Part shown: positions 13,839 through 61,900 of the stretch, one piece after another | Layout: every line of letters starts with the position of its first letter | Numbering within the stretch: the first letter of the stretch is position 1 | Virus record (IMG/VR): IMGVR_UViG_3300042923_000474 | Span: 62,001 to 126,000 of that record | Length of the DNA: 64,000 nt | Reading direction: 5' to 3' (one strand) | Notes under the pieces: model-generated | What the model was told of the DNA's origin: nothing | Database searches by the model: none | Seen by the model: the letters and a program-made list of their open reading frames with translations, nothing else | Program-made: the position numbers and the translations under genes

Positions 13839-16040
13839 ATGTCAATTGATCTCAACACCGTCAGTCTCCCCTTCGACCGTTGGGGCACAGCAGCTACCAA
13901 CAAGATCGTGGGGGAACGACAAACTCTCACCAGCGTCGCCTGGACAGAGTTCAATATCCTGATTCCGAAGTACGCTCCGTACTACTCGGAGAGTATCCCG
14001 AACGACGGCATTACTCACTTGCCAAGTGGGCGCAAGCTGGTTCGTGGTAAGGACTGGATCGAGGGCTGGTACTTCCAATCCGCTTCTGGCGAACTGGGCC
14101 TGGACCTGCACTGCTGCATTTATTTCTACGACCCAACCTTGGCGGGTGAAGTCGAGATCCCATCCTACCAAGCGATGGGTGGTGAATGGCAACTCAATGC
14201 GGCGTTGCTCACCAAGATCCTCGCAGAGAAACTGCTCAACCCACTGCGTTACTACTGGGAGCAGATTGCAGAGCTGCCAGAAATCTTCAACCCGCTGGAC
14301 CACGACCAAGACATCGAAGACTTTACTCGTCTCGGCAGCTTGATCGACGTCCTGCGTGAGATCGCTCAGGCGATCGGCAAAGATGACCCGGCTATCCTGG
14401 CTCACATTGCCAACAAGAACAACCCACACGGCACCAACAAAGGCCACGTGGGGCTGCCGCTGGTAGAGAACTGGCGTCCGGCTGATCTGAATGACTTGGT
14501 TGTCGGTAACTTGACGTACCAGGCGTACATGAACCCGCCGATGACGTACCAGTTGATCCAGCGTACGGCCATCCCTGCGATCAATGCGCACATTGCGCGG
14601 GTGGACAACCCTCACAATACCCGTGCAGACAAAACCGGTGCCTACTTCAGAGAAGAAGTTGATGCCCTGTTGGAATCGCTGGCTCGTGGTCTGATCCACA
14701 ACGTCTATGCTTATCGCCTTGAAGGTAAGAGCGTGGCCGACATTGTGGCACTGGCTCGTGGTGATGCCTCCGGCAGCCTGGACGAACTGCGCAACCTGAT
14801 CACCGGCGTTTCGAATGCGGCGAATGCTCACGCCCAACGTACTGACAATCCGCACAACACGCGGGCTGACAAGACGGGCGCCTACTTCACGACTGAAGTG
14901 GATGCGTTGCTCGATGCACTGGCTACAGGTAACCTGCACAACCTCTACGCCTACCGTTTGGAAGGCAAGAGCGTACAGGATATCATCAGTGCCTCCATCG
15001 CCGGTGTGGTTGACCGGATGGATGAGATCAAGCAGGACGTACTGGACACCCTGACCGCCACGCTGAACAACTACAAGGCTGTCGACACCACCAAGTTTGC
15101 CGGTAAAACGGAAGACCAGTGGGTGGACATCATTGATGGCAAAATCGTTGAGGCGGTGAACCATTGGAACATCTGGCCACCGGGCGACGTCATCGGTAGC
15201 GAGACTGAGGCAAGCGTTATCCTCATTGCGGAAATGTCCGACTCTGAAGATTCAGGCGGCACCGACGCCTCGCACCGTGGTAGCTTTGGCTTCCGTGTTC
15301 TGATGGGTGGTCCTAACACCACTTCTGCAACCAACTATGCCGACATCTTTGTATCGCAGAGTACGGGTCAGGCGTGGGGTATCGCCTCTGCTGCATTGCC
15401 AACCGGCGTCTCGTTCTTCTTGGAAAACAAGTTCGGTGACGATGGTTCGCTGTGGGATGGTACCAAGCGTCTGTACATGCGTGCTCCGGCAGGCTTTGGC
15501 GCTGTGGGCGTTACTGCGTTCTCCATGACCGGTATCACAGTTCCGGGCGAGCAGGACATCTGGAAGCAGTCGACGTGGAATGGTTTGGGTTCCCCTACCA
15601 ACACCGTCAACATCCAGCTGACCACCAACGGCACCAAGGAAATGACGGACGCCGTGGCTACCAACGTAGGTCTGCTGACTACAGCACTGACCAACTTGGG
15701 CACCACTGTCGGCACCCAAGGCGGCAAGATCCTCGCACTGGAGAACAGCAACAAAGTTCGCTATGCGCAGAGTCGTCAAATCCCAGCCGGTCTCAAGATC
15801 ACCATCGACCTGCAAACGTTGGTGACCGATCCTGCAGACTACGCCAAGTACGATTACCTGGGCGCTCGTGTCAACGTATTGCTCCTGGACGAGGTGGCCG
15901 AATCCAACTCCAAGGATTCGTACATTGAAGCCTCGACCACTGTGGTCAAAGCTCTCCGTGGCAACCGCTATCTGGATCTGTGGAACTACGATACGGTTCC
16001 GGTTACGGTCGCCGTGCGAATCGAGCTGCCATTGCTCTAA
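13839..16040 (+). CDS. Tail fibre protein, phiKZ gp145/146-like
   Basis: N-terminal attachment-type domain, NPH motifs, 80-aa tandem repeat, Gly/Ser/Thr-rich distal domain. Confidence 0.75.
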   Translation: MSIDLNTVSLPFDRWGTAATNKIVGERQTLTSVAWTEFNILIPKYAPYYSESIPNDGITHLPSGRKLVRGKDWIEGWYFQSASGELGLDLHCCIYFYDPTLAGEVEIPSYQAMGGEWQLNAALLTKILAEKLLNPLRYYWEQIAELPEIFNPLDHDQDIEDFTRLGSLIDVLREIAQAIGKDDPAILAHIANKNNPHGTNKGHVGLPLVENWRPADLNDLVVGNLTYQAYMNPPMTYQLIQRTAIPAINAHIARVDNPHNTRADKTGAYFREEVDALLESLARGLIHNVYAYRLEGKSVADIVALARGDASGSLDELRNLITGVSNAANAHAQRTDNPHNTRADKTGAYFTTEVDALLDALATGNLHNLYAYRLEGKSVQDIISASIAGVVDRMDEIKQDVLDTLTATLNNYKAVDTTKFAGKTEDQWVDIIDGKIVEAVNHWNIWPPGDVIGSETEASVILIAEMSDSEDSGGTDASHRGSFGFRVLMGGPNTTSATNYADIFVSQSTGQAWGIASAALPTGVSFFLENKFGDDGSLWDGTKRLYMRAPAGFGAVGVTAFSMTGITVPGEQDIWKQSTWNGLGSPTNTVNIQLTTNGTKEMTDAVATNVGLLTTALTNLGTTVGTQGGKILALENSNKVRYAQSRQIPAGLKITIDLQTLVTDPADYAKYDYLGARVNVLLLDEVAESNSKDSYIEASTTVVKALRGNRYLDLWNYDTVPVTVAVRIELPLL
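14583..14975 (+). repeat. Intragenic tandem repeat, 240-nt period
   Basis: DNPHNTRADKTGAYF..EVDALL..LA.G..HN.YAYRLEGKSV twice, starting 14583 and 14823. Confidence 0.9.
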
Positions 16041-32244: not shown

Positions 32245-32718
32245 TTACTTGATCTTGGAAAGCACCATGGAGATGAATTCCTCTAGGGATTTGGCGATGA
32301 TCTGCCGTTTAGGTTTACCGGTGCGGAAAAGGATGATCTGACCCCGTCGCCCACCGGCTGCTGGCGCTTGGTCAATGCAGTAATAGTCTGCCCCATTGAT
32401 TTTGGCAAACGGAATCCACGCAGGGTTCCACCAGGTAGCTGCGACCCCAGAGTCCGGCACAGCTTTCTTGTCGTCGGTCTTGCCATCGGTGTAGGTCTCG
32501 TTGAAACCTTTCCAGAGGGTCAACACCTTCTGATGAGGCAGGAATACAATCTTGCCCCCTTCAGTCTTGATGGACATCCCGTTGGATTGTTCCAGCGCAG
32601 AGCGCAGGTCCTTGGGCATGTCGATCTTTGCTTTCTGTTCGTTCGCATCGGCCTTGGCCTTATCGAGTTCAGGTCCCTTTTTTACACCTTCCGGCAGGGA
32701 TGACAAGTTAACGGCCAT
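32245..32718 (-). CDS. SMI1/KNR4 (SUKH) family immunity-like protein
   Basis: MPKDLRSALEQSNG, WWNPAWIPFA, DYYCIDQAP..GG..GQIILF, IAKSLEEFI. Confidence 0.85.
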   Translation of the reverse strand: MAVNLSSLPEGVKKGPELDKAKADANEQKAKIDMPKDLRSALEQSNGMSIKTEGGKIVFLPHQKVLTLWKGFNETYTDGKTDDKKAVPDSGVAATWWNPAWIPFAKINGADYYCIDQAPAAGGRRGQIILFRTGKPKRQIIAKSLEEFISMVLSKIK

Positions 32719-33154
32719 TGCGAGGCTCCTGATTGATTTGCTCTATATAGTTCAACCAGTTGGTGAGGAAGTCACGAGCCTTATCGTGATTGCCCACTGT
32801 CTTACCGGTCTGACGACCCGCTACAAAAGCTGCACGAGACAGTTCACGAATGCCATGGTAGGCTTGCTCTTTACGACGCAGGCTTTCCCAGTCCAGACGT
32901 TTGTCGATGCCGTGCAGATGGGAACGGATGTGGAAGGTGATCATGTTTGCACGGTGGCCACCAATGGGTTCCGGCAACTCTACAGCTTCCAGCTTTTCCA
33001 ACTCCTGACCCGCCACGTGATCGGCGTAGATCTCCTTGTGCATCTGTTCATGCATGTCCATGCCGCGTTGCTCTTCTGGAGTCAGCGGCTTCTGAAGATC
33101 TGACTGATAAGTGAAATCAGACATCAGACCTGCATTGAAGGGTGACGATCGCAT
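32708..33154 (-). CDS. Hypothetical protein with an isolated terminase-type Walker A peptide (GRQTGKT)
   Basis: GGAG RBS; AFVAGRQTGKT encoded at 32798-32818. Confidence 0.7.
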   Translation of the reverse strand: MRSSPFNAGLMSDFTYQSDLQKPLTPEEQRGMDMHEQMHKEIYADHVAGQELEKLEAVELPEPIGGHRANMITFHIRSHLHGIDKRLDWESLRRKEQAYHGIRELSRAAFVAGRQTGKTVGNHDKARDFLTNWLNYIEQINQEPRNGR

Positions 33155-33363
33155 ATGAAACTCCGTAGTCTTTCAGGGAACCCTCGCATGCTCACGTACT
33201 GATTCCGAGCGTGCTGCTGGCCACACAGATAAATAAAGTCACGACGCTGTTGGGCATCGAAAGTGATTGCACCCAACTGCATGCAGTAGGGCAGGGGCTT
33301 AAGAATCCCGCCCACTCGGTTCGCCATCATCTCCAGCATCGGAGTCGGTAACGTCAGGTTCAT
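33124..33363 (-). CDS. Possible hypothetical protein (79 aa)
   Basis: Fills the gap in the operon but overlaps both neighbours. Confidence 0.4.
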   Translation of the reverse strand: MNLTLPTPMLEMMANRVGGILKPLPYCMQLGAITFDAQQRRDFIYLCGQQHARNQYVSMRGFPERLRSFICDRHPSMQV

Positions 33364-33913
33364 TGAGCGACTCCATTAGCATGCGATCGATGGGGTCCAT
33401 GGGACCGTACTCGGTAGGGGGCACCATCAGGAAATCAATGTCACTTGACGGCGTGGGTTCGGAATGATCAACAGTGCCCGTAGGGACTATCCGGCCCAAG
33501 TAAGGGACACCATCCTTACTGACATCAATACGGGAGACGGGGTCTGGCATGAAATCGCAATTGCCAATGCTCAATGAGTCAATGGACAATGGATGAGGAT
33601 ACTCGGTCACCATCTGACGAATGCCACCGTCCTCTACGGCCGTCGGGCGAGTGGCGAAGAACTGCCGTTCGAATTCCCGCTCCCGATGACGCAACTTGAT
33701 CCATTCCAACTGGGCCCTGAAGTTGATGTCTTTCTCAAAGCCAGACACATGACTCGTGACACAAAAGCTCAGCGCCTTGATGTACGAGGGAGGCTGGCTA
33801 AGGGCGTAGCGAGGAACGCCCTCTTCAACCAGACTGGTGGCCAAAGCGTCCAGCTGTTCCTGTTCACGTTTCCTGTCTGCTTGACGCTGGAGGCGCTTTC
33901 TACGGTTGGCCAT
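33299..33913 (-). CDS. Hypothetical protein, basic N-terminus and acidic C-terminus
   Basis: AAGG RBS; 204 aa. Confidence 0.65.
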   Translation of the reverse strand: MANRRKRLQRQADRKREQEQLDALATSLVEEGVPRYALSQPPSYIKALSFCVTSHVSGFEKDINFRAQLEWIKLRHREREFERQFFATRPTAVEDGGIRQMVTEYPHPLSIDSLSIGNCDFMPDPVSRIDVSKDGVPYLGRIVPTGTVDHSEPTPSSDIDFLMVPPTEYGPMDPIDRMLMESLNEPDVTDSDAGDDGEPSGRDS

Positions 33914-33926
33914 TTTCTTACCTTGA

Positions 33927-34625
33927 TTAACGTGGTTGCCTGAAAGATTGCTTGGATCTGTGGCGTATTACTGAGCCCCGCATCTTCTTGGTACGGTTCT
34001 GCCGCTTACGGTTGCGCAGGATGTCCAGCGTGACCATTTGCAACAGTACATCACAGATGAGGTTGTGTGCAGCATCCGCGCGCTCTGGAGACATCCCTAC
34101 GACGTACTGTTGCATGGTGTCTGCATCCATCACAATGTCGCCCGGCAGTGGACCATCAGGACGACCCAACGCATCACCACCGTGCCACATCGGAGGAACC
34201 TTGACGTTGCGCAGGGGTTCTGGGATGTCGACAACGACGGGGCCAAAGGCATTTAAGAAGGTGGGTTCAAAGTCCGGCGTAGATTTTCTTTCACCACGCA
34301 ACATTGTTTGAACACTGGGTTGCAGGTGACTGTCGCACAGGCCGAAGCTTAAAACGTCTTCGCCTTTACCTAGGCCATTGACCAAACCGACCTCGGAGAT
34401 AACTGCGTAGGCTTGACCTTTGTGCTGGGTCATGTTCACCTCGTAGACCTTACCGTTAGACAACTCCAACGGTGCCTGGATGATGTCTAACAGCTCCTTT
34501 GGGAACTCGTAGAGGTGCCGGGCAATACCTGTCTTCTCCTCGACAGGTTCAGCAACCTTCGGAGCGTCACCTATCCGGGTGATCTCCATGGCGGTTATGT
34601 CGCACAGCTTATTGCCTTTTTCCAT
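33927..34625 (-). CDS. Hypothetical protein with an Arg/Lys-rich C-terminus
   Basis: Start moved to ATG 34625; overlap-coupled. Confidence 0.65.
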   Translation of the reverse strand: MEKGNKLCDITAMEITRIGDAPKVAEPVEEKTGIARHLYEFPKELLDIIQAPLELSNGKVYEVNMTQHKGQAYAVISEVGLVNGLGKGEDVLSFGLCDSHLQPSVQTMLRGERKSTPDFEPTFLNAFGPVVVDIPEPLRNVKVPPMWHGGDALGRPDGPLPGDIVMDADTMQQYVVGMSPERADAAHNLICDVLLQMVTLDILRNRKRQNRTKKMRGSVIRHRSKQSFRQPR

Positions 34626-35220
34626 GATTGATATCTCGAATGGCTTGTTGTAAAGGTGGGAGGATCTCTTGTTGAGGTCCCATGTAATCGCAATGGCCGA
34701 TAGTTCCCACATTGACAATGGGTTTCTTCAGCCCGGCCAGAGGATCTTCGTACATACCACCCCACGCCTTGTACGAGACGGTGTAGCGATCACGCCATGG
34801 CTCGATAGCGATCACGTTGGCAGCGATCATGTAGCGAGTCATGGCCTCTGCATCACGCAGGTGCACGATGTGGTCATGGAGAGGATCTGCCAGCGGCCCA
34901 CCGAACATGGGTTCCATGCTGCACTTGGTGTGCCCGGTGTAATACAAGATGCGCTCATTGGGATCACGCTCGTCTACGACCCGCCTGGTCCTTAGGTCGT
35001 AACCACGCGCACGATAAACCGAGTGACGGTGTGCATTGGGTTCAACGACCGATTGGAGTGGAGAGTTCTCCAACATCTCCACATGGGCTGCATGGATTTT
35101 GGATTGGTAGAATTCATTGCGGGCTTTATGCCACTCGTCCATGGCTTGCTCGTGGGCCAATTCCCCTTTCTCAAAGAGGCGATGCCAGCTGCTCTTCTTG
35201 AAGCTTACAAAGGTATCCAT
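34609..35220 (-). CDS. Hypothetical protein with an EF-Tu-like peptide KPIVNVGTIGHCD
   Basis: 203 aa; motif encoded at 34687-34725. Confidence 0.7.
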   Translation of the reverse strand: MDTFVSFKKSSWHRLFEKGELAHEQAMDEWHKARNEFYQSKIHAAHVEMLENSPLQSVVEPNAHRHSVYRARGYDLRTRRVVDERDPNERILYYTGHTKCSMEPMFGGPLADPLHDHIVHLRDAEAMTRYMIAANVIAIEPWRDRYTVSYKAWGGMYEDPLAGLKKPIVNVGTIGHCDYMGPQQEILPPLQQAIRDINHGKRQ

Positions 35221-36353
35221 TGATCTTCTACCCGATAAGAGAAGGAAGGTTCGCCAGCTCTAACCTTAACCTGCACGCGGTTTGGGCCGACAGCCTTAAT
35301 GACCTCACGATCAAAGAGGCATTCCAATTGACCCTCAGTTACGAGGGGGTGATTGCCATGTTCCTTAACCACCTCATTCCATGCAGTGATCGCTGCAAAC
35401 TTCAGCTCTTCGGTACTCATAGGCGCCTTGACCGACGGCATGATTATCGAGGAACCTGTGTCGATGCGACGGAAGTGGTGACCTTCACGAGGCCTGATGC
35501 CCGGCAGGCTGTATACCCACTCGCCATCGCCAGCCTTGAACTTGAAGCTGACCTTGTCGTACTTCTCATCCTTCCAGATGGCCTCAGCGGAAACCATCTC
35601 TGGTCCAACTTCACGCCAGAAGTCTTGGAACTTGGTTGCCACGACGGTGTGAGGTGGGCTTTGGTGATGGGCGAAGTACACCATGGTGAAGCTCCACGCT
35701 TTCTGAGCCAGTTCTTCATACGTGGCCAATGAGCTGGGTGTGGGATATCGTGAGGAAGGCTCTACCGTGACCGTAGGGAAGTAGATCTCAGCGAACTGTG
35801 CCGGCTTCCCGCCCAGATATTCATCCAGCGAGATCGGACGCTCAATCTCTTTCCACTCACCCCAGACCAGTTGCTCGTAACGCACACCCATGCCGACGAA
35901 ACGAACACGAGCCAGCTCGGAGCCAAACTTCTCACGAGCAGCCCGTGCAAATTCAGCCTGCATGTGCTCGCCGTAGCGGTCGCGGTTAGCGGAGTAAATG
36001 CGGCTCCATGTTTCATCGCACCATTCCCACGTTGGGCCGTCTACCATCTCTTCCCTGTAGTAGTCGCCGATGGAGAGGGCCGGTGGGAACAGAGGAGGGG
36101 TGCCGATCGCCTTTTTCTCAATCTCTGACCACGTCAGCATGTCGCCGTCCATATCGCCCGGTGTCTTGTCAGGATACTGAGGCAGTGTACGGATGGCATC
36201 CCATGCGTAACGTTCAGCTTTCGCGCCGAGGATACGTGTGAAGAAGTATTCTGGATTAACCCTGACTTCTTCCAGAATGAGTTCCTTCTGCTCCTGAGTC
36301 AGGTTCGGCGAGAAAGGGTCAAGCGCCTTTACGTTCTTGTTAATCAGTTCCAT
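35205..36353 (-). CDS. Hypothetical protein with a terminase-N-like first 40 aa
   Basis: ALDPFSPNLTQEQKELILEEVRVNPEYFFTRIL; start moved to ATG 36353. Confidence 0.7.
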   Translation of the reverse strand: MELINKNVKALDPFSPNLTQEQKELILEEVRVNPEYFFTRILGAKAERYAWDAIRTLPQYPDKTPGDMDGDMLTWSEIEKKAIGTPPLFPPALSIGDYYREEMVDGPTWEWCDETWSRIYSANRDRYGEHMQAEFARAAREKFGSELARVRFVGMGVRYEQLVWGEWKEIERPISLDEYLGGKPAQFAEIYFPTVTVEPSSRYPTPSSLATYEELAQKAWSFTMVYFAHHQSPPHTVVATKFQDFWREVGPEMVSAEAIWKDEKYDKVSFKFKAGDGEWVYSLPGIRPREGHHFRRIDTGSSIIMPSVKAPMSTEELKFAAITAWNEVVKEHGNHPLVTEGQLECLFDREVIKAVGPNRVQVKVRAGEPSFSYRVEDQWIPL

Positions 36354-36729
36354 GCTGTTCCCCCACAGTTGTAATGTCAGTAAGTTGGTAAGCTTCTTTC
36401 CCGTCGACGCAGACCGAGATAGCATTGAACGGTTCGCCCACAGGGATCGCAGTGATGCGCCCATGGATCTCCACCGGCAGCTTAACGGAGTTAGCCTTCT
36501 CCACAATTGCTCGGGCCAGTGTGACGTGAATGTCTTCGCCTTCCAGTTGGACATTGGTTTCATCGTCCAATGCCAAGTCAACTACCTGACAGGCAATCCA
36601 CAAGCGTTGACTGGTCGCCAAGGCCTCTGGGTTGCTGTCGTACATGGTGGACAGAGTCGGGTACTGCATTGCGCGCAGCATCTCGGTGGCTTGATCTGCT
36701 TCAACCTGAGGGATGAATTGCTTTACCAT
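36340..36729 (-). CDS. Hypothetical protein (129 aa)
   Basis: GGAG RBS. Confidence 0.7.
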   Translation of the reverse strand: MVKQFIPQVEADQATEMLRAMQYPTLSTMYDSNPEALATSQRLWIACQVVDLALDDETNVQLEGEDIHVTLARAIVEKANSVKLPVEIHGRITAIPVGEPFNAISVCVDGKEAYQLTDITTVGEQHGTD

Positions 36730-36746
36730 GATTTACTCCAAAATTA

Positions 36747-36774
36747 GCATAAAGGCCCACCCCGAAGGATGGGC
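36747..36774 (-). terminator. UUCG hairpin followed by CTTTATGC on the minus strand
   Basis: Minus strand GCCCATCC-TTCG-GGGTGGGC-CTT-TATGC. Confidence 0.7.
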
Positions 36775-36943
36775 ACAATGGGGGCTTATGCCCGAGGCAG
36801 GCTGGTAGCCAAGGCTACCCAGAAGTCACGCCAAACTTTCTGCACGTCCAGAAGCGCTTTCGCATTTCCATACGGGCAGACGAGAGGGATAGACTGCTGT
36901 GGGATTACAACAGGAAGCTTTCGGTTCATGACGCCCCCAGACA

Positions 36944-37774
36944 TTACTTCTGCTCAGCCTGATCTTTCTTGGCCTGCTCTTCAGCAGCCAGATCTTCAGC
37001 CGACTTTTCTACAGGCGCCGGAGCGTCGGTATTTGGTTTGTCGGTATTGACCTGTTCCAGGCCGGCAGCAGAGCTGGCAGCAGGTGGAACCTGTTCAGGG
37101 TTTGGCGCAGAGGGCAGATCGTTGCTTGCAGGCACAGCGCCTTCAAGTACGGTCTTTTCTTCTGGCAGTTTCATGTCGGTTGGAGCAGAGCCAGTTTGTG
37201 CTTCAGCGGCCACTTCCGAAGTGGTCACAACCACTGCAGAGTCAGGCTGCCCTTCAACTGGTGCTGCACCCGCTTGACGACCAGCGTCAGAGATGGTCAG
37301 ACCGTTGTCAGCCGACGGAGCGACGTATTCAACGCCGTTCTGTTCGTTCAGAGAGGCATTGCCCTCGTGCAGAACATTGTCGACCACAGGGGCTTGCAGG
37401 TCTTCACCAGCGCCATTGCGGTGACTGCCCGGAGCCCAGGTGCCCACCACTTCGCTTTCGTGCAGGACGTTGGCTTTACGCTCGCCTTGGCTACCGTCAG
37501 AGACGGACACTGCCAGAAGGGCCAGACGCGGGTGGTGGTTGGTGGCCAACTGGTTGAATCGACGGACGAAGGTCGACGTTTCCAGATGTTCCTTGTTGGC
37601 CTCGGCCACACCGACAACCTCATTGATGAGGACGCCAACTTTCGACTTGATGACATCGGTCGAAGGTTCCGGGGTGTTGTCGCGTTTCGGTTCAGTTGCC
37701 TGAGCCTTCACTTGAGCGTCTGCAGCTTGGGTGCGCTGCTGCTCTTGCTGGCGACGTTGGTTCTTCTTGGACAT
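36944..37774 (-). CDS. Acidic, largely disordered hypothetical protein (276 aa)
   Basis: GGAG RBS; Ala/Glu/Pro/Gln-rich. Confidence 0.7.
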   Translation of the reverse strand: MSKKNQRRQQEQQRTQAADAQVKAQATEPKRDNTPEPSTDVIKSKVGVLINEVVGVAEANKEHLETSTFVRRFNQLATNHHPRLALLAVSVSDGSQGERKANVLHESEVVGTWAPGSHRNGAGEDLQAPVVDNVLHEGNASLNEQNGVEYVAPSADNGLTISDAGRQAGAAPVEGQPDSAVVVTTSEVAAEAQTGSAPTDMKLPEEKTVLEGAVPASNDLPSAPNPEQVPPAASSAAGLEQVNTDKPNTDAPAPVEKSAEDLAAEEQAKKDQAEQK

Positions 37775-37827
37775 GTGATTTCTCCATGTTTCAGTTGAAT
37801 GTGGAGTGGGGTCCCCACATAAGAATG

Positions 37828-38121
37828 TCAGGAGTGCAGGATTTCCAGCACGTGATCCACCAGATCCTGGCCCTCTTTCAGCTCAGGTGTCATGGGGTAC
37901 AAATTCTCAGCCTTGGTACGGTTCAGGCGGAACTGCTTGAACACAGGAGGACCCTCGCCGTACCACTGACCTTTATCGGCTACCATGACCGAGTAGCGTC
38001 CTTGCTTGGCGCCGAGGTGATGTACACGCTTATCACCGATCATGACTTTGTTGGCGTTGAAGAAGCAAAGACGCAGGTGGTCTGTGGGTACCGAAGTACC
38101 CATCACGTTAAGCCCACTCAT
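37828..38121 (-). CDS. Hypothetical protein (97 aa)
   Basis: Start moved to ATG 38121, TAATG overlap with the upstream stop. Confidence 0.6.
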   Translation of the reverse strand: MSGLNVMGTSVPTDHLRLCFFNANKVMIGDKRVHHLGAKQGRYSVMVADKGQWYGEGPPVFKQFRLNRTKAENLYPMTPELKEGQDLVDHVLEILHS

Positions 38122-38411
38122 TACGAAATCTCGACGTCGGCCAGTTTCAGGAAGCGGTGGTACCAGTACGACCAGTTGTGACGGCATTCCAGACGAATGG
38201 CTTCACGCTGCTCTTCGGTAACATCCGGGCTGAAGGGGTCCAGCTCTTTCAGGGCAGGGTTGACGTAGTACAGGCCTTCCGGTACCTGGATGAGTTTAGA
38301 AGCAGCTGCACGCTGCTCCTGAGTCATCTCCTCGTAACGGCGAGCCAACTTGATGCTCTCATCGTTTTCGAGGAAGGTGGCGTCAAACTTAAATTCACTA
38401 TCGGTATTCAT
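38121..38411 (-). CDS. Stand-alone 96-aa protein resembling the N-terminus of phiKZ-like large terminase
   Basis: NDESIKLARRYEEM...NPALKELDPFSPDVTEEQREAIRLECRHNWSYW; TAATG-coupled to SbcC. Confidence 0.65.
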   Translation of the reverse strand: MNTDSEFKFDATFLENDESIKLARRYEEMTQEQRAAASKLIQVPEGLYYVNPALKELDPFSPDVTEEQREAIRLECRHNWSYWYHRFLKLADVEIS

Positions 38412-40891
38412 TAACTAATCTCCACATGCAGATTGGCGTCGGCTGGACGCGTGATATTTCGGTCATCCAATACCACGAACTCGGCTTGGTTAAATGAACC
38501 ATAGACCGACGAATAGTGACTGACCATGAACAACTGACTGAACCGACCCTGCTCCATCAGCGACTGAATGTAATTGACCAGACGCTCGCGGTGCTCATCG
38601 TCAAAGTCCTTACCGAACTCATCGGCCAGCAATGGGAAGTCGTGTAAACCTGTCAACTCCATCACCACCAACTTGAACACCCAGTCAATCATCGAGACCT
38701 GACCGGTAGACCCATCGGCAATATCGCCATCGGGGTTCGGTTGGTTGTTGACAATGATCGGGAGTTTCACGTTGAGGGTAGCGCCTTCCTCCAAGACCGC
38801 ATCAATCTCCATCGGGTACGTCCACACCATCGCAATGTGTTCGTTGATCATCCCAGTGAAGTGACGAATGAAGTTCTTGGTGATGTCTGCCACAATGCCA
38901 TGAGTAGGTGACAGGGCGCGAGCCAGTAACTTGTACGACGTGAAGCGAGACTCCACATCAATCAGCTCACTGCGAGAGTTCTCGTAACGGGCTTGTAGGT
39001 CACGGTAACGCTGGGTGGATTGGTGCAGGGTAGCCAGACGGGTCATCACCTTGCCACGCACCTGATCCAGATGCTCATCACGCAGTGCATCTTCCACTTG
39101 CTTACGCAGGGAGTTGAACGATTCAATGGCGTTGGACATCTCCATCATCAGAGTATCCAACTTCTCCAAGTGATAGAGTTCCTCACTGAGTTGGGCCATT
39201 GCGATCGTTGCCTGGTTCACCGCCTCGTACTTGTCGTGCAGCTCACCTTCGAGCAGGTCAGCACGCTGCAGCAGGAACTTAGGATCACCACTGTTCTTGA
39301 TCAGCTCCAGACGCGATGTGAGGTCCTTTAGCTCTGCAGTGATACGCTTGGCGTAAGCAGTGTCCAAAAGCTTTCTAATCGTGTCTGAGAGCGCCACAGA
39401 GATCATGGCAGGGTTAGTGCGTACATAACCTCGTTCACTCACCATCTCCCAGAAAGCAGACAACACTTTGGAGCCTTCACGAATACGAGCCAACTCACCG
39501 AGCTTACGGCTGTAGTCATCAAAGTCTGAGATGTGGACAGACAACTCCTCCATCTCCCGCTGAGCCTGCTCCACCTTTTGACGACGACTGTCCAACCGCG
39601 CCTGAGTTTGCTCAACCAACCCAGCAGGCCAGCCCGGCTTGAAGGTGTGTTCACACTTAGGGCAGTTGGTATCAGCGGTGTGGGTCGCATGTTCCAGCGT
39701 CGCCTCCATCTTGGAGATGACGTTGTTGGATTCAATGCACCACTGACTGAGTTTGGTGTAGCGCTCCATCCTTTCAGAGTGAGTACCACGAGCGTACAGT
39801 CCTTCGGTGTTGGCAGGGATCGTGACGCACAGTTCAGTCAGTTGCTGCTGGATACCTTCCGCTACGGCCAGCAACGCTTCAGGAGACTCGCTACCGCATT
39901 CGTAGAGACTGCCTTGAGCTTGGATACCCGCCAGCTCTTCTTCGATCTGTGCAACGCGTGTAGTGAGCTGAGAAGGATCGTCCAAAGACTCACGACCTAC
40001 GTGACGGATCAGCGACTGGATACCTTCCAGTGCTTTCTCATGGGTGTCACACTCCCCACGGGTCTTCATCATCCGATCACGCAGCGAGGAGATCTCGCCA
40101 TCCACCTGCTCTTTGGTCTTGCCACCGTACTTGGAGTTGTCACGAATGACCGTCTCCGCCACGATGGTTTGAGAGCGCTGGTGAATGGTCTTGTACGCGT
40201 CCTGCATGCGCTTGATCAGACCACTGGAATCGGCTACCGACATTCGGCCATTCAAAGCGTGGTTGAGTTCAATGCCCAACTGCTTGAGTTGAGTGACCTC
40301 ATCATCCGTGTCCTTGAAGTCATCCTCCATAGAACGGATCTCATCGGACATGTCATGTGTCAGGTCCAGCAGGTACTTCATCGTACCCTGCATGTCACGG
40401 GCTTTGACACGAAACTGTTCGAACAGACCCAACACGTAATCAAAGTCAGTCCCTGAGATACGCATCATCCACTCACGGCGTTTGGAGGGACTCATCTGAG
40501 ACAGGCGTGCTCGTCCTGTCAGAATGTCACTCACCTCTTGGGTCAACCCCACGTAACGCTCTACCAACTCTTTCTGAGTGGCCTGAGTGTTGCCGTCGTT
40601 CAGCTGAACACCGTTCATGTTAAAGGTGTGGTGACCGGCCTTAACGTTATAGACGCTGATCAGGTTGAAGTTTGAATCGTTGTGTTCGAAGAAGTATTCG
40701 ACACCACCACCTTTGTGGAAACGGCTACCGTTAGGCACAAGGTTCAGAATCGCTTGTAGCAAAGAACTTTTACCTGCCCCGTTACTGCCCAGCACAATTT
40801 GTTCCTGTGACTGCGGCGTATATTCGAAGCGCCAAATACCCGCTAGGTCAAAAGACTTGTAGCCGGTTAGGATGATTTTGAGAAGACGCAT
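38411..40891 (-). CDS. sbcC: SbcC/Rad50-like SMC ATPase
   Basis: Walker A GSNGAGKS, coiled coils, central CPKC zinc hook, signature GSTGQ, Walker B LLADE, H-loop MVSH. Confidence 0.92.
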   Translation of the reverse strand: MRLLKIILTGYKSFDLAGIWRFEYTPQSQEQIVLGSNGAGKSSLLQAILNLVPNGSRFHKGGGVEYFFEHNDSNFNLISVYNVKAGHHTFNMNGVQLNDGNTQATQKELVERYVGLTQEVSDILTGRARLSQMSPSKRREWMMRISGTDFDYVLGLFEQFRVKARDMQGTMKYLLDLTHDMSDEIRSMEDDFKDTDDEVTQLKQLGIELNHALNGRMSVADSSGLIKRMQDAYKTIHQRSQTIVAETVIRDNSKYGGKTKEQVDGEISSLRDRMMKTRGECDTHEKALEGIQSLIRHVGRESLDDPSQLTTRVAQIEEELAGIQAQGSLYECGSESPEALLAVAEGIQQQLTELCVTIPANTEGLYARGTHSERMERYTKLSQWCIESNNVISKMEATLEHATHTADTNCPKCEHTFKPGWPAGLVEQTQARLDSRRQKVEQAQREMEELSVHISDFDDYSRKLGELARIREGSKVLSAFWEMVSERGYVRTNPAMISVALSDTIRKLLDTAYAKRITAELKDLTSRLELIKNSGDPKFLLQRADLLEGELHDKYEAVNQATIAMAQLSEELYHLEKLDTLMMEMSNAIESFNSLRKQVEDALRDEHLDQVRGKVMTRLATLHQSTQRYRDLQARYENSRSELIDVESRFTSYKLLARALSPTHGIVADITKNFIRHFTGMINEHIAMVWTYPMEIDAVLEEGATLNVKLPIIVNNQPNPDGDIADGSTGQVSMIDWVFKLVVMELTGLHDFPLLADEFGKDFDDEHRERLVNYIQSLMEQGRFSQLFMVSHYSSVYGSFNQAEFVVLDDRNITRPADANLHVEIS

Positions 40892-40956
40892 GGGTAGGCT
40901 TTCCGTATTCGTAGGCATTCGCTAATAAGTGCCCCCAATCTGTTAGGAGATACACG

Positions 40957-58986: not shown

Positions 58987-61900
58987 TCACACGGACGTTG
59001 GAGCTTTGACACTCATTGGACCACCTGCCCCAGTAGCTGGAGCACGTTGACTTTGTGCTGCAATGATCTGCAACAGCTGCACTTGTTGTTGCTGCAACTG
59101 TAGAGACTTCGAACCAATGTCGATCAGCTTGTCAATGCCTGCACCAGAAGTGTTAGCCGCTGATGTAGTATTGGCTGCTGCTTGCGCTGCACGCTGTTCC
59201 GCCTGTACCTGGGCTTGGCTTGGGGATGGAGCAGATGTACCCGGAGCCGAAGCACCCGTGTCGCCACCGCCGCCACCCGAAGAACCGCCACCAGAACTGG
59301 TAGGAGCCAACGAGGTTTTGAGCAACTCTGGAGGAGCGCCCGGTGCTGCTGCAATGTCGGCACCACCCGAGTTAGCATCACGCGCCATGGAGGCCACGGA
59401 TGGTTTACCCTGTTCACCAACTGGACCACCTGTCGTCGGAGCATTGCCAGCAGCCGAGGCATCAGGGTTAGGACCCGTATCCTTAGGCTGACCTGCAACA
59501 GTCTGCTCTGTACTGCTCAGTGGGTTCACACCTTCGCCAGCACGCAACATGCTGTCGTCAACCTTCTCACCCTTGGACTTCATGTAGGAGTACATCAGCG
59601 AACCGAACTTGTTCCGGTTGCCCACCTGCTTAGCAGCCATGAGATCGATGATCTGACGGAACGTACGCGGCTTGGATTTGTCGCCACCCACGTAGAAGAT
59701 CGGTTTGTTATAACCTGCCTCCTTCGGCATGACATCCGCACCGTACTTGTCCAGATTCTTGAGCGCGGTTTTGTAACCACCGGAACCCAAGAAGTGAGCC
59801 ATGTACGCATCCACATCCGTCAGTGGACGGTTGAGAGTACCTTTGAGCGACTCCATGTTGTCCTTCATGTACATTACTGTCATGAGGGCGTTAGCACGTG
59901 GATCGTTCGGGTCGGTACCTTCCTTGATACCAAACTTCGCACCGTGCTTTTTGATCATCGCTTTCCAGGTACCCGTGATGAACTGACCCAGACCAGTCGC
60001 AGAGCCACCCATAGAAGATTTAACCGAGGAGTCAAACCCAGACTCAGTGGCCATGAGGCCAGCAAGTACACCTGGATCTACGCCGGTCATCTTCGCTACA
60101 GCCGCAATCAGCTCTTTGTGAGCGTCAAAACCTTTGCGGGATGTAGGCATTGGCAAGTCATTGACATTGCCGGCACTGCCACCATTCGGGTCAAACGTCA
60201 GACCGACGCCACCACCATTCTGAGCATTGTACTCACCCGGCTTACCACCTACCCCTTGGTTGTAGAGATCCGTCTTGTTCTGGTTGTAGGTATCGGAAAG
60301 GTTGCCGCCCGCGGTACGTTCACCGGAGCTTGGACCTTTGAACATGTTGGTGAACCAGTTGCCGCCTTCCGAAGAAGGAGTAGCGCCCTTATCACCGCCT
60401 GCACCGAAGAAGTTCTTGACGCTATCCACAGCGCCAGAGAAGAAGTCTTTGGTCTTAGACATCAGACCGGACTTCACCTTACCAGACTCACCCGCCACCT
60501 CATCGAGTTGTTGCTTCTCGATGTCTTTGATGAGCGCCTTCATGTTATCCGCCGCAGTCGACGAATCCATGTTAGGTGCATCACCGTAGTACGGAGACAG
60601 GGGGACCTTCCAGATGGCTACAAAGTTGTCTTTGTAGTACGAACCCGCAGAGATCACCGCCTCAGCCAACTTGTATTGCTCAGTTGGTTTGCAGTGAACG
60701 TGAGCCAGCAATGGATCGGTGTTACCCGACACCGCCTTGAGAGCACCCACGTAGGCTTTGTACACGGGCAAGAAGCGATAGTTCAACCAGTCCTTGAAGG
60801 TGTTGAAGCTTTCCGACCCAGGTTGCCCCACGCCGAACTTCGCACCCGCCAGACCAATCAAGTCTTCCAGCGTGCCGGTGTAATCAGCCGAGCCGTCCGA
60901 ACTTGCCCGCATCTTCTGCTGAGCAGCCCACTCCAGATACAGCAAGGCATGAACCTTCTGCACATCCAAAGTGATCAGGCCATACGCACGCATACGGATC
61001 GTACGCAGTGGGTCCAATGGACCTTTAGGCAACAGCGATGTTGGGAACTCATTCGCAGCAGAGCCAGACGTTGGACGCGTACCACCACTCATGGCCAGCG
61101 CACCCGCCATGACAGGCGTCACAGAACCCACTGCCATAACCGCAGCAGCAGAGCCCATGGTTTGCTGGGTGGTCATCACCTTGGACGGTGCAGCGACTTC
61201 AGCCACCACGGCAGCCCCAGCCACACCTGTACCCAATGCAGCAGCCTCAGCCGCCAGTTGCCGCGCCTTGTCGTTCCCACCCTCTGGCAGCGGTAGGTCA
61301 GTCTTGGCGTTGGCTTTACCGAACTTCTCCACAGCAGCGTCAGCCAGTGCTTTGATAGCTGATGGATCGGTGAGCATGTTCATGTCTTCACCGGGAGCCG
61401 AACCAATGGTCCAACCCGCGCTACCCGCCGTCTTCACCAATTCGAGCAAGGTCTTCTTGGTTTCGTCGTTGAGCTTGTCATCCACCTCAGGTAGTTTGGC
61501 AGAAGCATCTACCTTGTTCAGGGCCATGACCCAAGTGTCGAACACCAAACGGAATCGCTTGTCGTACCACTCTTGGAAGCTTCTGAACTTAAGGTCACGT
61601 GGCTTCTCTGGATCGATGTCAAACTCTTTCAGAGCTGCGATTGCATCATCGCCACCTGCGCCCACGTCGATCTTGCCGTCGGTGACTTTGGTGTGTTTGA
61701 GAATCTTCTCCTCAAAGGCCAACATCTTCTTGGCCACATCGCTATCCTTACCATCCCACCCGTACTGAGCCAACCTGAGTCTTTGCAGCGGACGATCTTT
61801 CGATGCGTCGTACCACTTGTACGCAAGCCATGCCACAGTACCCACAGCCATCGCAATACCCACAGCCGCCATAACAGGAGCCGACACAATACCTGCTGCC

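What the first reader, a model, noticed from the sequence alone, without database searches (positions are those of the whole stretch)
32245..38411. Candidate anti-defence decoy island: ORFs carrying isolated fragments of terminase and EF-Tu beside a SUKH immunity protein
Seen: in one minus-strand block of otherwise unrelated ORFs, two share an LDPFSP..T.EQ.E.I..E...N..Y segment, one has GRQTGKT, one has KPIVNVGTIGHCD, and the last is a SMI1/KNR4 protein. Knowledge: Avs2 and Avs3 STAND NTPases sense large terminase (Avs3 contacts ATPase and nuclease active-site residues), and EF-Tu is the target of the Lit protease. The terminase-N resemblance is from my memory of phiKZ-like terminases. Inference: the block encodes non-catalytic molecular mimics that titrate pattern-recognition immunity or EF-Tu-directed effectors.
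Basis: partly seen in the sequence, partly recalled or inferred. Interest (0 to 1): 0.82.

Follow-up and report, generated by a model that had tools for sequence, protein, structure and literature searches.

The report
Extra terminase-tip modules in jumbo phage
A strain-variable accessory operon of an uncultivated phiKZ-like jumbo phage holds two genes carrying a conserved 45-residue copy of the large terminase's N-terminal segment, plus a SUKH-type binding protein. The supposed EF-Tu and Walker-A "fragments" are short motifs no better than chance, and what the terminase-like module does is untested.

Summary
Only two are demonstrable homologies.

(1) g1 (38121-38411) and g5 (35205-36353) each carry about 45 residues homologous to residues 44-89 of chimallivirus large terminase (TerL). 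A profile of 83 TerLs gives E=2e-8 and 1e-8; the next-best ORF in the window scores E=2.

(2) g11 is a SMI1/KNR4 (SUKH-1) protein.

GRQTGKT is not a terminase or P-loop remnant. It decays within its own family and is absent from the paralog g8, and such patterns occur at chance frequency. The EF-Tu-like string is 11/14 identical but not significant. It is, however, the invariant core of a small orphan family in which no member has a P-loop.

The phage's own TerL is intact, about 52 kb from sbcC, and is not the source of the copies. The same module sits in non-terminase proteins of phages Noxifer and Kwan. It is under purifying selection (dN/dS about 0.1). Both copies are present or absent among strains that are 95-98% identical.

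Best reading: an accessory hotspot encoding a terminase-N-like docking module on swappable partner domains. A decoy role against Avs or Lit is not supported, because the fragments lack the surfaces those systems use. A competitor or mimic role remains possible.

The parts
38411..40918 (-). sbcC-like ATPase. It is the last gene syntenic with other chimalliviruses and anchors the block.
   Evidence: phrog_77 E=1e-73. It is 30% identical to Ralstonia phage RP12 SbcC. Synteny with RP12 stops at its 3' end.
38121..38411 (-). g1, 96 aa: a stand-alone terminase-N-like protein. The TerL-homologous span is about 38142-38303. It is a strain-specific insertion.
   Evidence: TerL HMM E=2e-8. 42% identity over 59 aa to Asesino TerL residues 29-87. 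Absent from L006, L007, L104, L106 and run X8. Present in runs X3, X6 and X7. Singleton cluster.
37828..38121 (-). g2, 97 aa, orphan
   Evidence: Ortholog in L006 at 54% identity. No family hit.
36944..37774 (-). g3, 276 aa: low-complexity acidic, Ala/Pro-rich orphan with a basic N-terminus
   Evidence: Orthologs in L006, L007 and L104. No family hit.
36755..36774 (-). GC-rich hairpin followed by a T-run. It is terminator-like and separates sbcC-g1-g2-g3 from g4-g11.
   Evidence: 8-bp stem with 6 GC pairs. This is a pattern match only.
36340..36729 (-). g4, 129 aa, orphan. In sister strain L106 it is fused in frame to the C-terminal half of g5.
   Evidence: Absent from L006 and L007. P0033 is a 323-aa g4::g5C fusion.
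35205..36353 (-). g5, 382 aa. It consists of an N-terminal terminase-N-like module (36225-36350), a hypervariable linker, and two tandem alpha-alpha-beta-beta(-beta) domains (35208-35729).
   Evidence: TerL HMM E=1.1e-8. Only 4 proteins in the family among 5.8e9. Motif conserved in L006, L007 and L104. In AF2 the motif is a helix-turn-helix at pLDDT about 78, and the C-terminal domain scores 70-89. The gene is replaced or absent in runs X6, X7, X8 and L106.
34609..35220 (-). g6, 203 aa, an orphan family. Its invariant core is ILYY.G ... VGT.GH.D ... L..AIR..N. The EF-Tu-like string is at 34684-34725.
   Evidence: 14-member family alignment. 26.6 bits against EF-Tu. AF2 pLDDT is below 50 at the motif.
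33927..34625 (-). g7, about 232 aa, orphan with a basic C-terminus. The start codon is uncertain.
   Evidence: 58% identity ortholog in L006. No family hit.
33299..33913 (-). g8, 204 aa, a paralog of g10
   Evidence: hhalign against the g10 family gives 90% probability, E=1.6e-6.
33124..33363 (-). g9, a possible 79-aa gene that overlaps the end of g8 and the start of g10
   Evidence: tblastn finds 69% and 43% conservation in L006 and L007. It is not called in L106. Uncertain.
32708..33154 (-). g10, 148 aa. The family core is PEPxGGxR..F (32933-32974). GRQTGKT is at 32798-32818 and HEQMH at residues 35-39.
   Evidence: Only 6 representative clusters among 1.84e9 proteins. The alignment shows that GRQTGK and HExxH are not family-wide.
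32245..32718 (-). g11, 157 aa, a SMI1/KNR4 (SUKH-1) protein. Its start overlaps the end of g10 by 11 nt, and it is the last gene of the operon.
   Evidence: PF09346 E=5e-15. PADLOC PDC-M40A E=8.7e-29. Only one weak hit among 50,697 phage records.

Best explanation
The block is a strain-variable accessory operon. It sits at the synteny break after sbcC in an uncultivated chimallivirus-type (phiKZ-like) jumbo phage found in soil and wastewater.

Shown:
- g1 and g5 carry a paralogous copy of the roughly 45-residue helix-turn-helix segment at residues 44-89 of chimallivirus large terminase. This segment lies upstream of the Walker A and is one of the most conserved stretches of that enzyme.
- The copies are neither debris of the phage's own terminase nor a split terminase gene. 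The own TerL is intact elsewhere and is among the TerLs least similar to the copies.
- The same module occurs at the N- or C-terminus of otherwise unrelated non-terminase proteins in phages Noxifer (gp119) and Kwan/Wellington (gp157).
- The module evolves under purifying selection while its linker and partner domains are swapped, deleted or replaced between near-identical strains.
- g11 is a SUKH-1 protein.

Inferred:
- The module is a non-catalytic protein-protein docking element that keeps the binding specificity of the terminase N-terminal segment.
- g5, and perhaps g1, would therefore compete with or piggy-back on whatever partner that segment contacts. This could be a packaging-machinery component of this or a co-infecting phage, or a host factor that recognises it.
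- g5 would deliver its C-terminal double domain to that partner.
- g11 would bind and neutralise a protein effector, as SUKH proteins do.

The EF-Tu-like and Walker-A-like strings are family-specific short motifs with no demonstrable homology to EF-Tu or terminase.
For: Homology:
- TerL HMM E=1e-8 and 2e-8, with the next ORF at E=2.
- PHROG phrog_2 hits.
- 253 TerL-bearing records hit by g1.

Own TerL:
- It was found by walking the contig: L102:2276-4456, 726 aa, E about 1e-270, with its own motif and Walker A.
- g1 and g5 are only 27% and 33% identical to it. It ranks 71st of 85 and 54th of 91 TerL hits.
- There is no DNA similarity between g1 and either the g5 N-terminus or the own TerL.

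Other carriers:
- Kwan gp157.
- Noxifer gp119, also found by Foldseek with probability 1.0 and 40% identity over 53 columns.
- All seven non-TerL copies form one clade apart from 83 TerLs (SH-like support 0.94).

Selection:
- Motif column identity is 0.66 against 0.35 for the linker.
- dN/dS is 0.10-0.13 with dS at or above 1.4.

Modularity and flux:
- Sister strain L106 is 95-97% identical at the nucleotide level. It lacks g1, and g5 codons 1-212 are replaced by 88 nt, giving a g4::g5C fusion.
- Runs X6 and X7 replace 1,099 nt of g5 with 240 nt but keep g1. Run X8 lacks g1 and also has a joint skipping about 1,100 nt of g5.

SUKH.

Negative results for the other motifs.
Against: - No binding partner is known for the terminase N-terminal segment, and none could be tested here.
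- The segment may be buried in the ATPase domain rather than exposed. I could not fold TerL.
- The AF2 model of g5 is poor overall (mean pLDDT 51).
- Strains lacking both copies exist. The module is therefore dispensable, which also fits neutral baggage.
- g1 is a singleton, so nothing shows it is under selection.
- The single-clade result rests on 43 columns and could be long-branch attraction. Independent local duplications are not rejected (AU p=0.13).
- There is no expression evidence. The one 'RNA' run that holds the region is probably DNA.
Confidence: 0.45

Rival explanations
1. The block encodes decoys that titrate Avs2/Avs3-type terminase sensors and EF-Tu-directed effectors such as Lit.
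For: - Real, conserved, non-catalytic terminase fragments are present.
- The locus is hypervariable, like counter-defence loci.
- A SUKH binder lies adjacent.
- Jumbo-phage TerL can weakly activate Avs5, and T4 carries a TerL-ATPase paralog, vs.8, that Avs2 senses.
Against: - The fragments lack the ATPase fold, ATP site, nuclease domain and core beta-strands that Avs2, Avs3 and Upx recognise.
- GRQTGKT is not a Walker A. The residue after K varies (T, P, S or D), the motif decays across the family, and paralog g8 lacks it.
- The EF-Tu-like string corresponds to residues 10-23, not to the Lit or Thoeris IV cleavage sites or the Avs7 interface. Its similarity is not significant.
Confidence: 0.08
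2. Inter-phage interference. The module is a dominant-negative mimic that jams terminase assembly or partner binding of co-infecting chimalliviruses. The phage's own, divergent TerL motif (DPHDP rather than DPFSP) would escape this.
For: - The copies resemble foreign TerLs more than the own TerL.
- Gain and loss occur at strain level.
- The module is spread across phages of different hosts.
Against: - This is purely inferential.
- The identity differences rest on about 45 residues.
- The DP.DP motif is common among TerLs, so the own TerL is not unusual.
- No co-infection data exist.
Confidence: 0.15
3. Non-functional recombination debris. The terminase-like pieces would be gene fragments dragged along by illegitimate recombination or homing-endonuclease traffic around TerL, which is often intron- or HEG-invaded in jumbo phages.
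For: - TerL genes of several jumbo phages are split in two pieces, one with an annotated homing endonuclease.
- g1 is a singleton insertion flanked by a repeated '...VEIS-stop-ATG' junction.
- Strains without the copies exist.
Against: - The g5 module is conserved in at least four diverged lineages, with dN/dS about 0.1 and an intact reading frame.
- The non-TerL copies share features with each other, such as ILEE in place of the TerL I..EC.
- There is no DNA similarity to the own TerL.
Confidence: 0.1
4. g10-g11 form a toxin/immunity-like pair. A small HExxH metallopeptidase-type effector (g10) would be held in check by its SUKH partner (g11).
For: - The g10 stop and g11 start overlap by 11 nt.
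- HExxH is invariant in the three closest orthologs.
- SUKH proteins are classically immunity partners of an upstream toxin (established knowledge: Zhang, Iyer and Aravind 2011).
- g11 matches defence-island candidate PDC-M40A.
Against: - HExxH is missing in 3 of 9 family members.
- g10 has no hit in Pfam, PHROG, NCBIfam or PADLOC.
- The invariant core is PEPxGGxR..F, which is not a peptidase signature.
- Its paralog g8 has no adjacent SUKH.
Confidence: 0.1
5. A fragmented or intron-split terminase gene whose exons are g1, g5 and g10.
For: On the coding strand an N-terminal motif comes first and a Walker-A-like string follows.
Against: - A complete 726-aa TerL is encoded about 52 kb from sbcC on the same contig.
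- No other TerL similarity exists in the window.
- The motif occurs twice.
- g10 is not TerL-like at family level.
Confidence: 0.01

Closest known systems
N-terminal segment (residues about 44-89) of chimallivirus/phiKZ-like large terminase (PHROG phrog_2)
   Same: There is significant profile and pairwise similarity. The shared signature is L.NP.L..(V/L)DP(F/H)..L...K..I..E...NP.YF, and the predicted fold is a helix-turn-helix.
   Different: g1 and g5 have no ATPase domain (Walker A/B) and no nuclease domain. They have ILEE where TerL has I..EC, and they lack the TerL-invariant W of NPWYF.
Pseudomonas phage Noxifer gp119 (157 aa) and Erwinia phage Kwan/Wellington gp157 (419 aa, annotated 'putative terminase large subunit')
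   Same: They are non-terminase proteins carrying the same module. They cluster with g1 and g5 apart from true TerLs and are uncharacterised.
   Different: The partner domains and gene neighbourhoods are unrelated: one sits after a DnaB-like helicase, the other before an EPS depolymerase. In Kwan the module is C-terminal.
T4 vs.8, a terminase-ATPase paralog that activates EcAvs2 (PMC13601566)
   Same: It is a phage-encoded partial paralog of the large terminase outside the packaging gene.
   Different: vs.8 keeps the whole ATPase fold with Walker A/B. g1 and g5 keep only the roughly 45 residues upstream of that fold.
SUKH-1 / SMI1-KNR4 immunity proteins of polymorphic toxin systems; PADLOC candidate PDC-M40A
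   Same: g11 passes the Pfam threshold and matches PDC-M40A over almost its full length.
   Different: g11 is encoded by a lytic-type jumbo phage, has no recognisable toxin domain upstream, and is nearly absent from sequenced phages (one weak hit).
EF-Tu N-terminus (beta-1 strand and start of the G1 loop)
   Same: 9-10 contiguous identical residues, (V)NVGTIGH(V)D.
   Different: The HGKT P-loop and the rest of the G domain are absent from every family member. The similarity score is at chance level for the window.

Membership tests
Large terminase (TerL) | N-terminal conserved segment upstream of the ATPase core | tested here: met
   g1 and g5 match HMM positions 44-86, E=2e-8 and 1e-8.
Large terminase (TerL) | ASCE ATPase domain with Walker A and Walker B | tested here: not met
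   No TerL similarity beyond the segment in g1, g5 or elsewhere in the window. g1 ends 10 residues after the segment.
Large terminase (TerL) | C-terminal RNase-H-like nuclease domain | tested here: not met
   No hit. The real TerL is L102:2276-4456.
P-loop NTPase (for g10, GRQTGKT) | GK[ST] conserved across the family, preceded by a beta-strand | tested here: not met
   The residue after K is T, P, S or D. Variants include GRTTGK, SRQSGK, GRNHGK and GKENTR. Paralog g8 has no such motif.
Translational GTPase / EF-Tu (for g6) | G1 P-loop GHVDHGKT and the G2-G5 motifs; Pfam GTP_EFTU | tested here: not met
   No Pfam hit. None of 14 family members has HGKT. Only 14 residues align.
SUKH-1 (SMI1/KNR4, PF09346) | Profile match above the curated threshold over the whole domain | tested here: met
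   56.6 bits against 25.4, residues 24-150.
SUKH immunity system | Adjacent cognate toxin gene | tested here: inconclusive
   g10 is translationally coupled to g11 but has no toxin-domain hit. HExxH is not family-wide.
Zinc metallopeptidase (for g10) | Invariant HExxH plus a third ligand | tested here: not met
   HExxH is absent in P0011, P0013 and P0015.
Decoy-type anti-defence protein against terminase sensors (Avs2/Avs3/Upx) | Presents the surface the sensor recognises (ATPase pocket with ATP, nuclease site, core beta-strands) | tested here: not met
   These regions are absent from g1 and g5. The sensor requirements are taken from PMC13601566.
Decoy-type anti-defence protein | Binds the sensor or rescues plating | not testable with these tools
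   Needs co-folding or experiments.
Chimallivirus-type (phiKZ-like) jumbo phage (genome context) | phiKZ-type core genes and synteny | tested here: met
   SbcC, UvsX, RNase H and a virion protein are syntenic with RP12. The contig is 231,724 bp and carries a phiKZ gp29-type sheath, PhiKZ_VTX and TerL. Chimallin itself was not looked for.

The most novel reading that the evidence does not exclude
Chimalliviruses carry a mobile, previously undescribed 'terminase-N-like' mimic module. It would be a single paralogous family spread across phages of Pseudomonas, Erwinia and soil hosts. Fused to interchangeable effector domains, it would be used to occupy the partner of the terminase N-terminus. That would either sabotage packaging by rival co-infecting jumbo phages or blind a host sensor that reads this most conserved terminase epitope. 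It turns over between strains as an arms-race cassette.
Probability: 0.2. Interest if true: 0.75.

Novelty: new variant of a known kind. Interest (0 to 1): 0.42.

Why it matters
phiKZ-like phages have no recognised small terminase, and nothing is known about what the conserved N-terminal segment of their large terminase contacts. A free-standing, selected copy of exactly that segment, attached to swappable domains and gained or lost between near-identical strains, gives a handle for finding that partner. Two cultivable phages, Noxifer and Kwan, carry it and could be used for the search. It would also allow a test of whether partial mimics of essential virion-assembly proteins are used in phage-phage or phage-host conflict. 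The negative results matter too. Two of the three 'fragments' that made the finding look like a themed decoy island are short-motif coincidences.

Tried and rejected
- **Split or intron-interrupted terminase:** rejected, because the own TerL is intact.
- **Recent duplication of the own TerL:** rejected. Identity is 27-33%, the own TerL ranks near the bottom of the TerL hits, and there is no DNA similarity.
- **GRQTGKT as a Walker A or terminase remnant:** the pairwise match to the own TerL looked suggestive (13/34 identical, E=0.008). It failed at profile level, family level, paralog level and against chance counts.
- **g6 as a decayed GTPase:** no family member has a P-loop. AF2 is uninformative at the motif.
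- **g10 as a metallopeptidase:** HExxH is not family-wide.
- **Searches that gave nothing useful:**
  - Megablast of the block against phages.
  - NCBIfam.
  - Atlas searches for g6, the g5 C-terminus and g10, all at chance-level scores.
  - Foldseek against PDB for g5 and g6, with no hit at E<=0.001.
  - The TerL-N profile against PDB.
  - Literature on the phiKZ TerL N-terminus.
- **First attempts to find the own TerL:** pattern scans of IMG/VR failed. One search matched the wrong pattern, and the own contig was not in the best 80.
- **Full-size AU test:** it timed out, so a reduced version was run.

Full report
**Context.** The window is 64 kb of a 231,724-bp uncultivated phage contig (IMG/VR UViG_3300042923_000474 = JGI Ga0456365_0000130). 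Window position equals contig position minus 62,000. The phage is a distant phiKZ-like (chimallivirus-type) jumbo phage:
- Its SbcC-like ATPase (38411-40918, minus strand) is at most 30% identical to those of Ralstonia phages RP12/RP31, 201phi2-1, Goslar and others.
- UvsX, RNase H, a virion protein and SbcC are syntenic with RP12. That synteny ends exactly at the 3' end of sbcC.
- The contig also encodes a phiKZ gp29-type sheath and PhiKZ_VTX.
- The same or closely related phages occur in soil, wastewater, leaf-litter and plant metagenomes.

**Gene map of the finding (minus strand, refined with orthologs).**

| Gene | Coordinates | Size | Note |
|---|---|---|---|
| g1 | 38411-38121 | 96 aa | start overlaps the sbcC stop |
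| g2 | 38121-37828 | 97 aa | |
| g3 | 37774-36944 | 276 aa | low complexity |
| hairpin | 36774-36755 | | terminator-like |
| g4 | 36729-36340 | 129 aa | |
| g5 | 36353-35205 | 382 aa | |
| g6 | 35220-34609 | 203 aa | |
| g7 | about 34625-33927 | about 232 aa | start uncertain |
| g8 | 33913-33299 | 204 aa | |
| g9 | 33363-33124 | 79 aa | possible gene |
| g10 | 33154-32708 | 148 aa | |
| g11 | 32718-32245 | 157 aa | |

Downstream genes converge on the block from the plus strand. Related contigs keep the cassette after sbcC:
- L006: SbcC 80% identical.
- L007: SbcC 71% identical.
- L104: SUKH 62% identical.
- L106: 95-97% nucleotide identity.

Identity to L006 ranges from 43% (g5) and 49% (g6) to 87% (g11), against 80% for SbcC.

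**The terminase resemblance is real.**
- g1 and g5 share the LDPFSP..T.EQ...I..E...N..Y segment (49% identity over 39 aa, E=5e-8).
- PHROG phrog_2 (terminase large subunit) hits both.
- tblastn of g1 finds 253 jumbo-phage records, almost all under annotated TerL genes.
- Asesino TerL residues 29-87 align to g1 (42% identity, E=1.7e-6), and residues 44-81 align to g5 (50% identity).
- An HMM I built from 83 chimallivirus TerLs scores g5 at E=1.1e-8 and g1 at E=2e-8, both at HMM positions 44-86. The next-best six-frame ORF of the window scores E=2.
- This segment is among the most conserved parts of these terminases. The locus-finding tool chose NP[WM]Y[FY]FR from it as a search pattern.
- It lies about 35 residues upstream of the Walker A.
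- AF2 predicts it in g5 as a helix-turn-helix at pLDDT about 78, in an otherwise poor model.

**The copies are not a broken or duplicated own terminase.**
- No other TerL similarity exists in the window.
- I walked along the contig with four exact-protein look-ups. This found the phage's own TerL at contig 154,833-157,013 (L102:2276-4456). It is 726 aa, scores E about 1e-270 against the TerL HMM, and has its own version of the segment (DPHDPNL...NPWYF) and its own Walker A.
- g1 and g5 are only 27% and 33% identical to it. It ranks 71st of 85 and 54th of 91 among TerL hits.
- g1 shows no DNA-level similarity to the g5 N-terminus or the own TerL.

**The same module occurs in other non-terminase proteins.**
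- Erwinia phage Kwan/Wellington gp157 (419 aa) has it near its C-terminus, and the true TerL is elsewhere in that genome.
- Pseudomonas phage Noxifer gp119 (157 aa, just after a DnaB-like helicase) has it at its N-terminus. Foldseek recovered this protein independently from the g5 model (probability 1.0, 40% identity over 53 columns).
- On the 43 shared columns, all seven non-TerL copies form one clade apart from 83 TerLs (SH-like support 0.94). They share ILEE where TerLs have I..EC.
- This rests on few columns. A topology with independent local duplications is 26 lnL units worse but is not rejected (AU p=0.13).

**Selection and turnover.**
- In the six-member g5 family (only four proteins in a 5.8-billion-protein search), the motif has column identity 0.66. 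The linker has 0.35, and the two C-terminal domains have 0.36 and 0.47.
- Pairwise dN/dS on the first 44 codons is 0.10-0.13, with dS at or above 1.4.
- Yet the module is dispensable and mobile.
  - Sister strain L106 lacks g1: window 38131-38406 is replaced by about 68 nt.
  - In L106, g5 codons 1-212 (window 35718-36357) are replaced by 88 nt. This fuses g4 in frame to the g5 C-terminal double domain, giving P0033 of 323 aa. L106 has no TerL-HMM hit at all.
  - Assembled contigs from other public runs show further alleles. X6 and X7 keep g1 but replace 1,099 nt of g5 with 240 nt. X8 lacks g1 (joint 38126 to 38417) and also has a joint across g5 (35256 to 36358). X3 keeps g1 and the g5 N-terminus.
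- More distant relatives (L006, L007, L104) have g5 with the module but have neither g1 nor g4. g1 is therefore most simply a recent acquisition in this strain lineage.

**GRQTGKT.**
- Against the own TerL, the g10 C-terminus gave a tempting 13/34 match around the Walker A (pairwise E=0.008).
- hhalign of the g10 family against TerL gives only 28% probability, and g10 is absent from the top 25 TerL-HMM hits.
- An exhaustive profile search of 1.84 billion representatives found just six clusters.
- In the nine-sequence alignment the motif decays (GRTTGK, SRQSGK, GRNHGK, GKENTR), and the residue after K is T, P, S or D. The invariant core is PEPxGGxR..F.
- g8 is a paralog of g10 (hhalign 90%) and has an unrelated sequence at that position.
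- P-loop-like patterns occur 6 times in the six frames against 5.3 +/- 2.2 in shuffles.
- An HExxH in g10 that I noticed is also not family-wide.

**EF-Tu-like string.**
- g6 residues 166-179 are 11/14 identical to E. coli EF-Tu residues 10-23 (26.6 bits). For the whole six-frame window this score is expected about 0.5 times by chance (my arithmetic).
- Nothing else aligns, and Pfam GTP_EFTU is silent.
- In a 14-member family the stretch (V/P)NVGTIGH.D(Y/W) is invariant, together with ILYY.G and L..AIR..N. It is among the best-conserved parts of the family (column identity 0.73, second only to the ILYY.G block at 0.77, against 0.40-0.50 elsewhere).
- No member has the HGKT P-loop, so this is a stable motif of an orphan family and not a decaying GTPase.
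- AF2 is uninformative there (pLDDT below 50).
- Known EF-Tu-directed defences act at G59/I60 (Lit) or R45/R59 (type IV Thoeris), or bind domains II-III (Avs7). None acts at residues 10-23.

**SUKH.**
- g11 is a bona fide SMI1/KNR4 protein.
- It matches the PADLOC defence-island candidate PDC-M40A (E=9e-29).
- It is almost unknown in sequenced phages, with one weak hit. Its word-indexed relatives all lie in this phage clade.

**Interpretation.**
- The themed 'decoy island' is not supported as stated.
  - Two of the three 'fragments' are not fragments.
  - The real one lacks every surface that Avs2, Avs3 or Upx are known to read.
- I propose, as inference, that the terminase-N-like module is a docking element. 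It would retain the binding specificity of the TerL N-terminal segment and bring swappable partner domains to, or compete for, that segment's partner.
- Whether that partner is viral (packaging, possibly of competing phages) or a host sensor is open.
- Confidence in the descriptive part is high, and in the mechanism low.

Noticed in passing
window 58987-64000 (continues beyond the window; L098:3000-9926): The 1,642-aa ORF at the window's end is part of a 2,308-aa gene with an SLT lytic transglycosylase domain. It is followed by 539-aa and 1,451-aa genes.
   Followed up: partly
window 35048-35717 and g5 as a whole: g5 is mosaic. Against L006, synonymous divergence is about 1.4 in the first 44 codons but 0.25 in the last 64. 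Against the 95-97% identical strain L106, a 670-nt patch is only 77% identical. This suggests recombination tracts inside the gene.
   Followed up: partly
window 38121-38130 and 38407-38420: Both ends of the strain-specific g1 insertion carry a similar junction: '...V-E-I-S, stop, overlapping ATG'. SbcC ends HVEIS and g1 ends DVEIS. This looks like a short imperfect direct repeat left by the insertion event.
   Followed up: partly
L006:14870-15549: In relative L006 the g6 ortholog is split into two ORFs of 72 and 154 aa, and only the motif-bearing C-terminal part matches well. In other family members the 70-residue stretch between ILYYTG and NVGTIGH is missing altogether.
   Followed up: partly
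window 32245-32718: The phage SUKH protein matches PADLOC 'phage defence candidate' PDC-M40A almost end to end (E=8.7e-29). This links a phage gene to a bacterial defence-island family of unknown mechanism.
   Followed up: no
other phage genomes (one search hits H104, H106-H110, H112): Large terminase genes of several jumbo phages (USC-1, YC1, LAh10, RisingSun, Madawaska and others) align in two pieces separated by about 0.9-1.4 kb. One has an annotated homing endonuclease, so TerL is a frequent invasion target in this group.
   Followed up: no
window 33388-33500 and 34358-34633: g8, g7 and the g6/g7 junction also carry replacement or indel alleles in other runs. For example, X6 has 111 nt replaced by 33 nt, and a 211-nt stretch is diverged at equal length. 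The whole cassette is polymorphic, not only the terminase-like genes.
   Followed up: no
window 14709 and 14949: The identical peptide AYRLEGKS occurs twice, 240 nt apart, inside the 733-aa tail-fibre/virion-protein-like ORF 13839-16040. This indicates an internal repeat.
   Followed up: no
window 36755-36774: A strong GC-rich hairpin with a T-rich tail lies between g3 and g4. The intergenic region around it (36779-36941) is itself replaced by a different 134-135-nt sequence in L106 and run X3.
   Followed up: no
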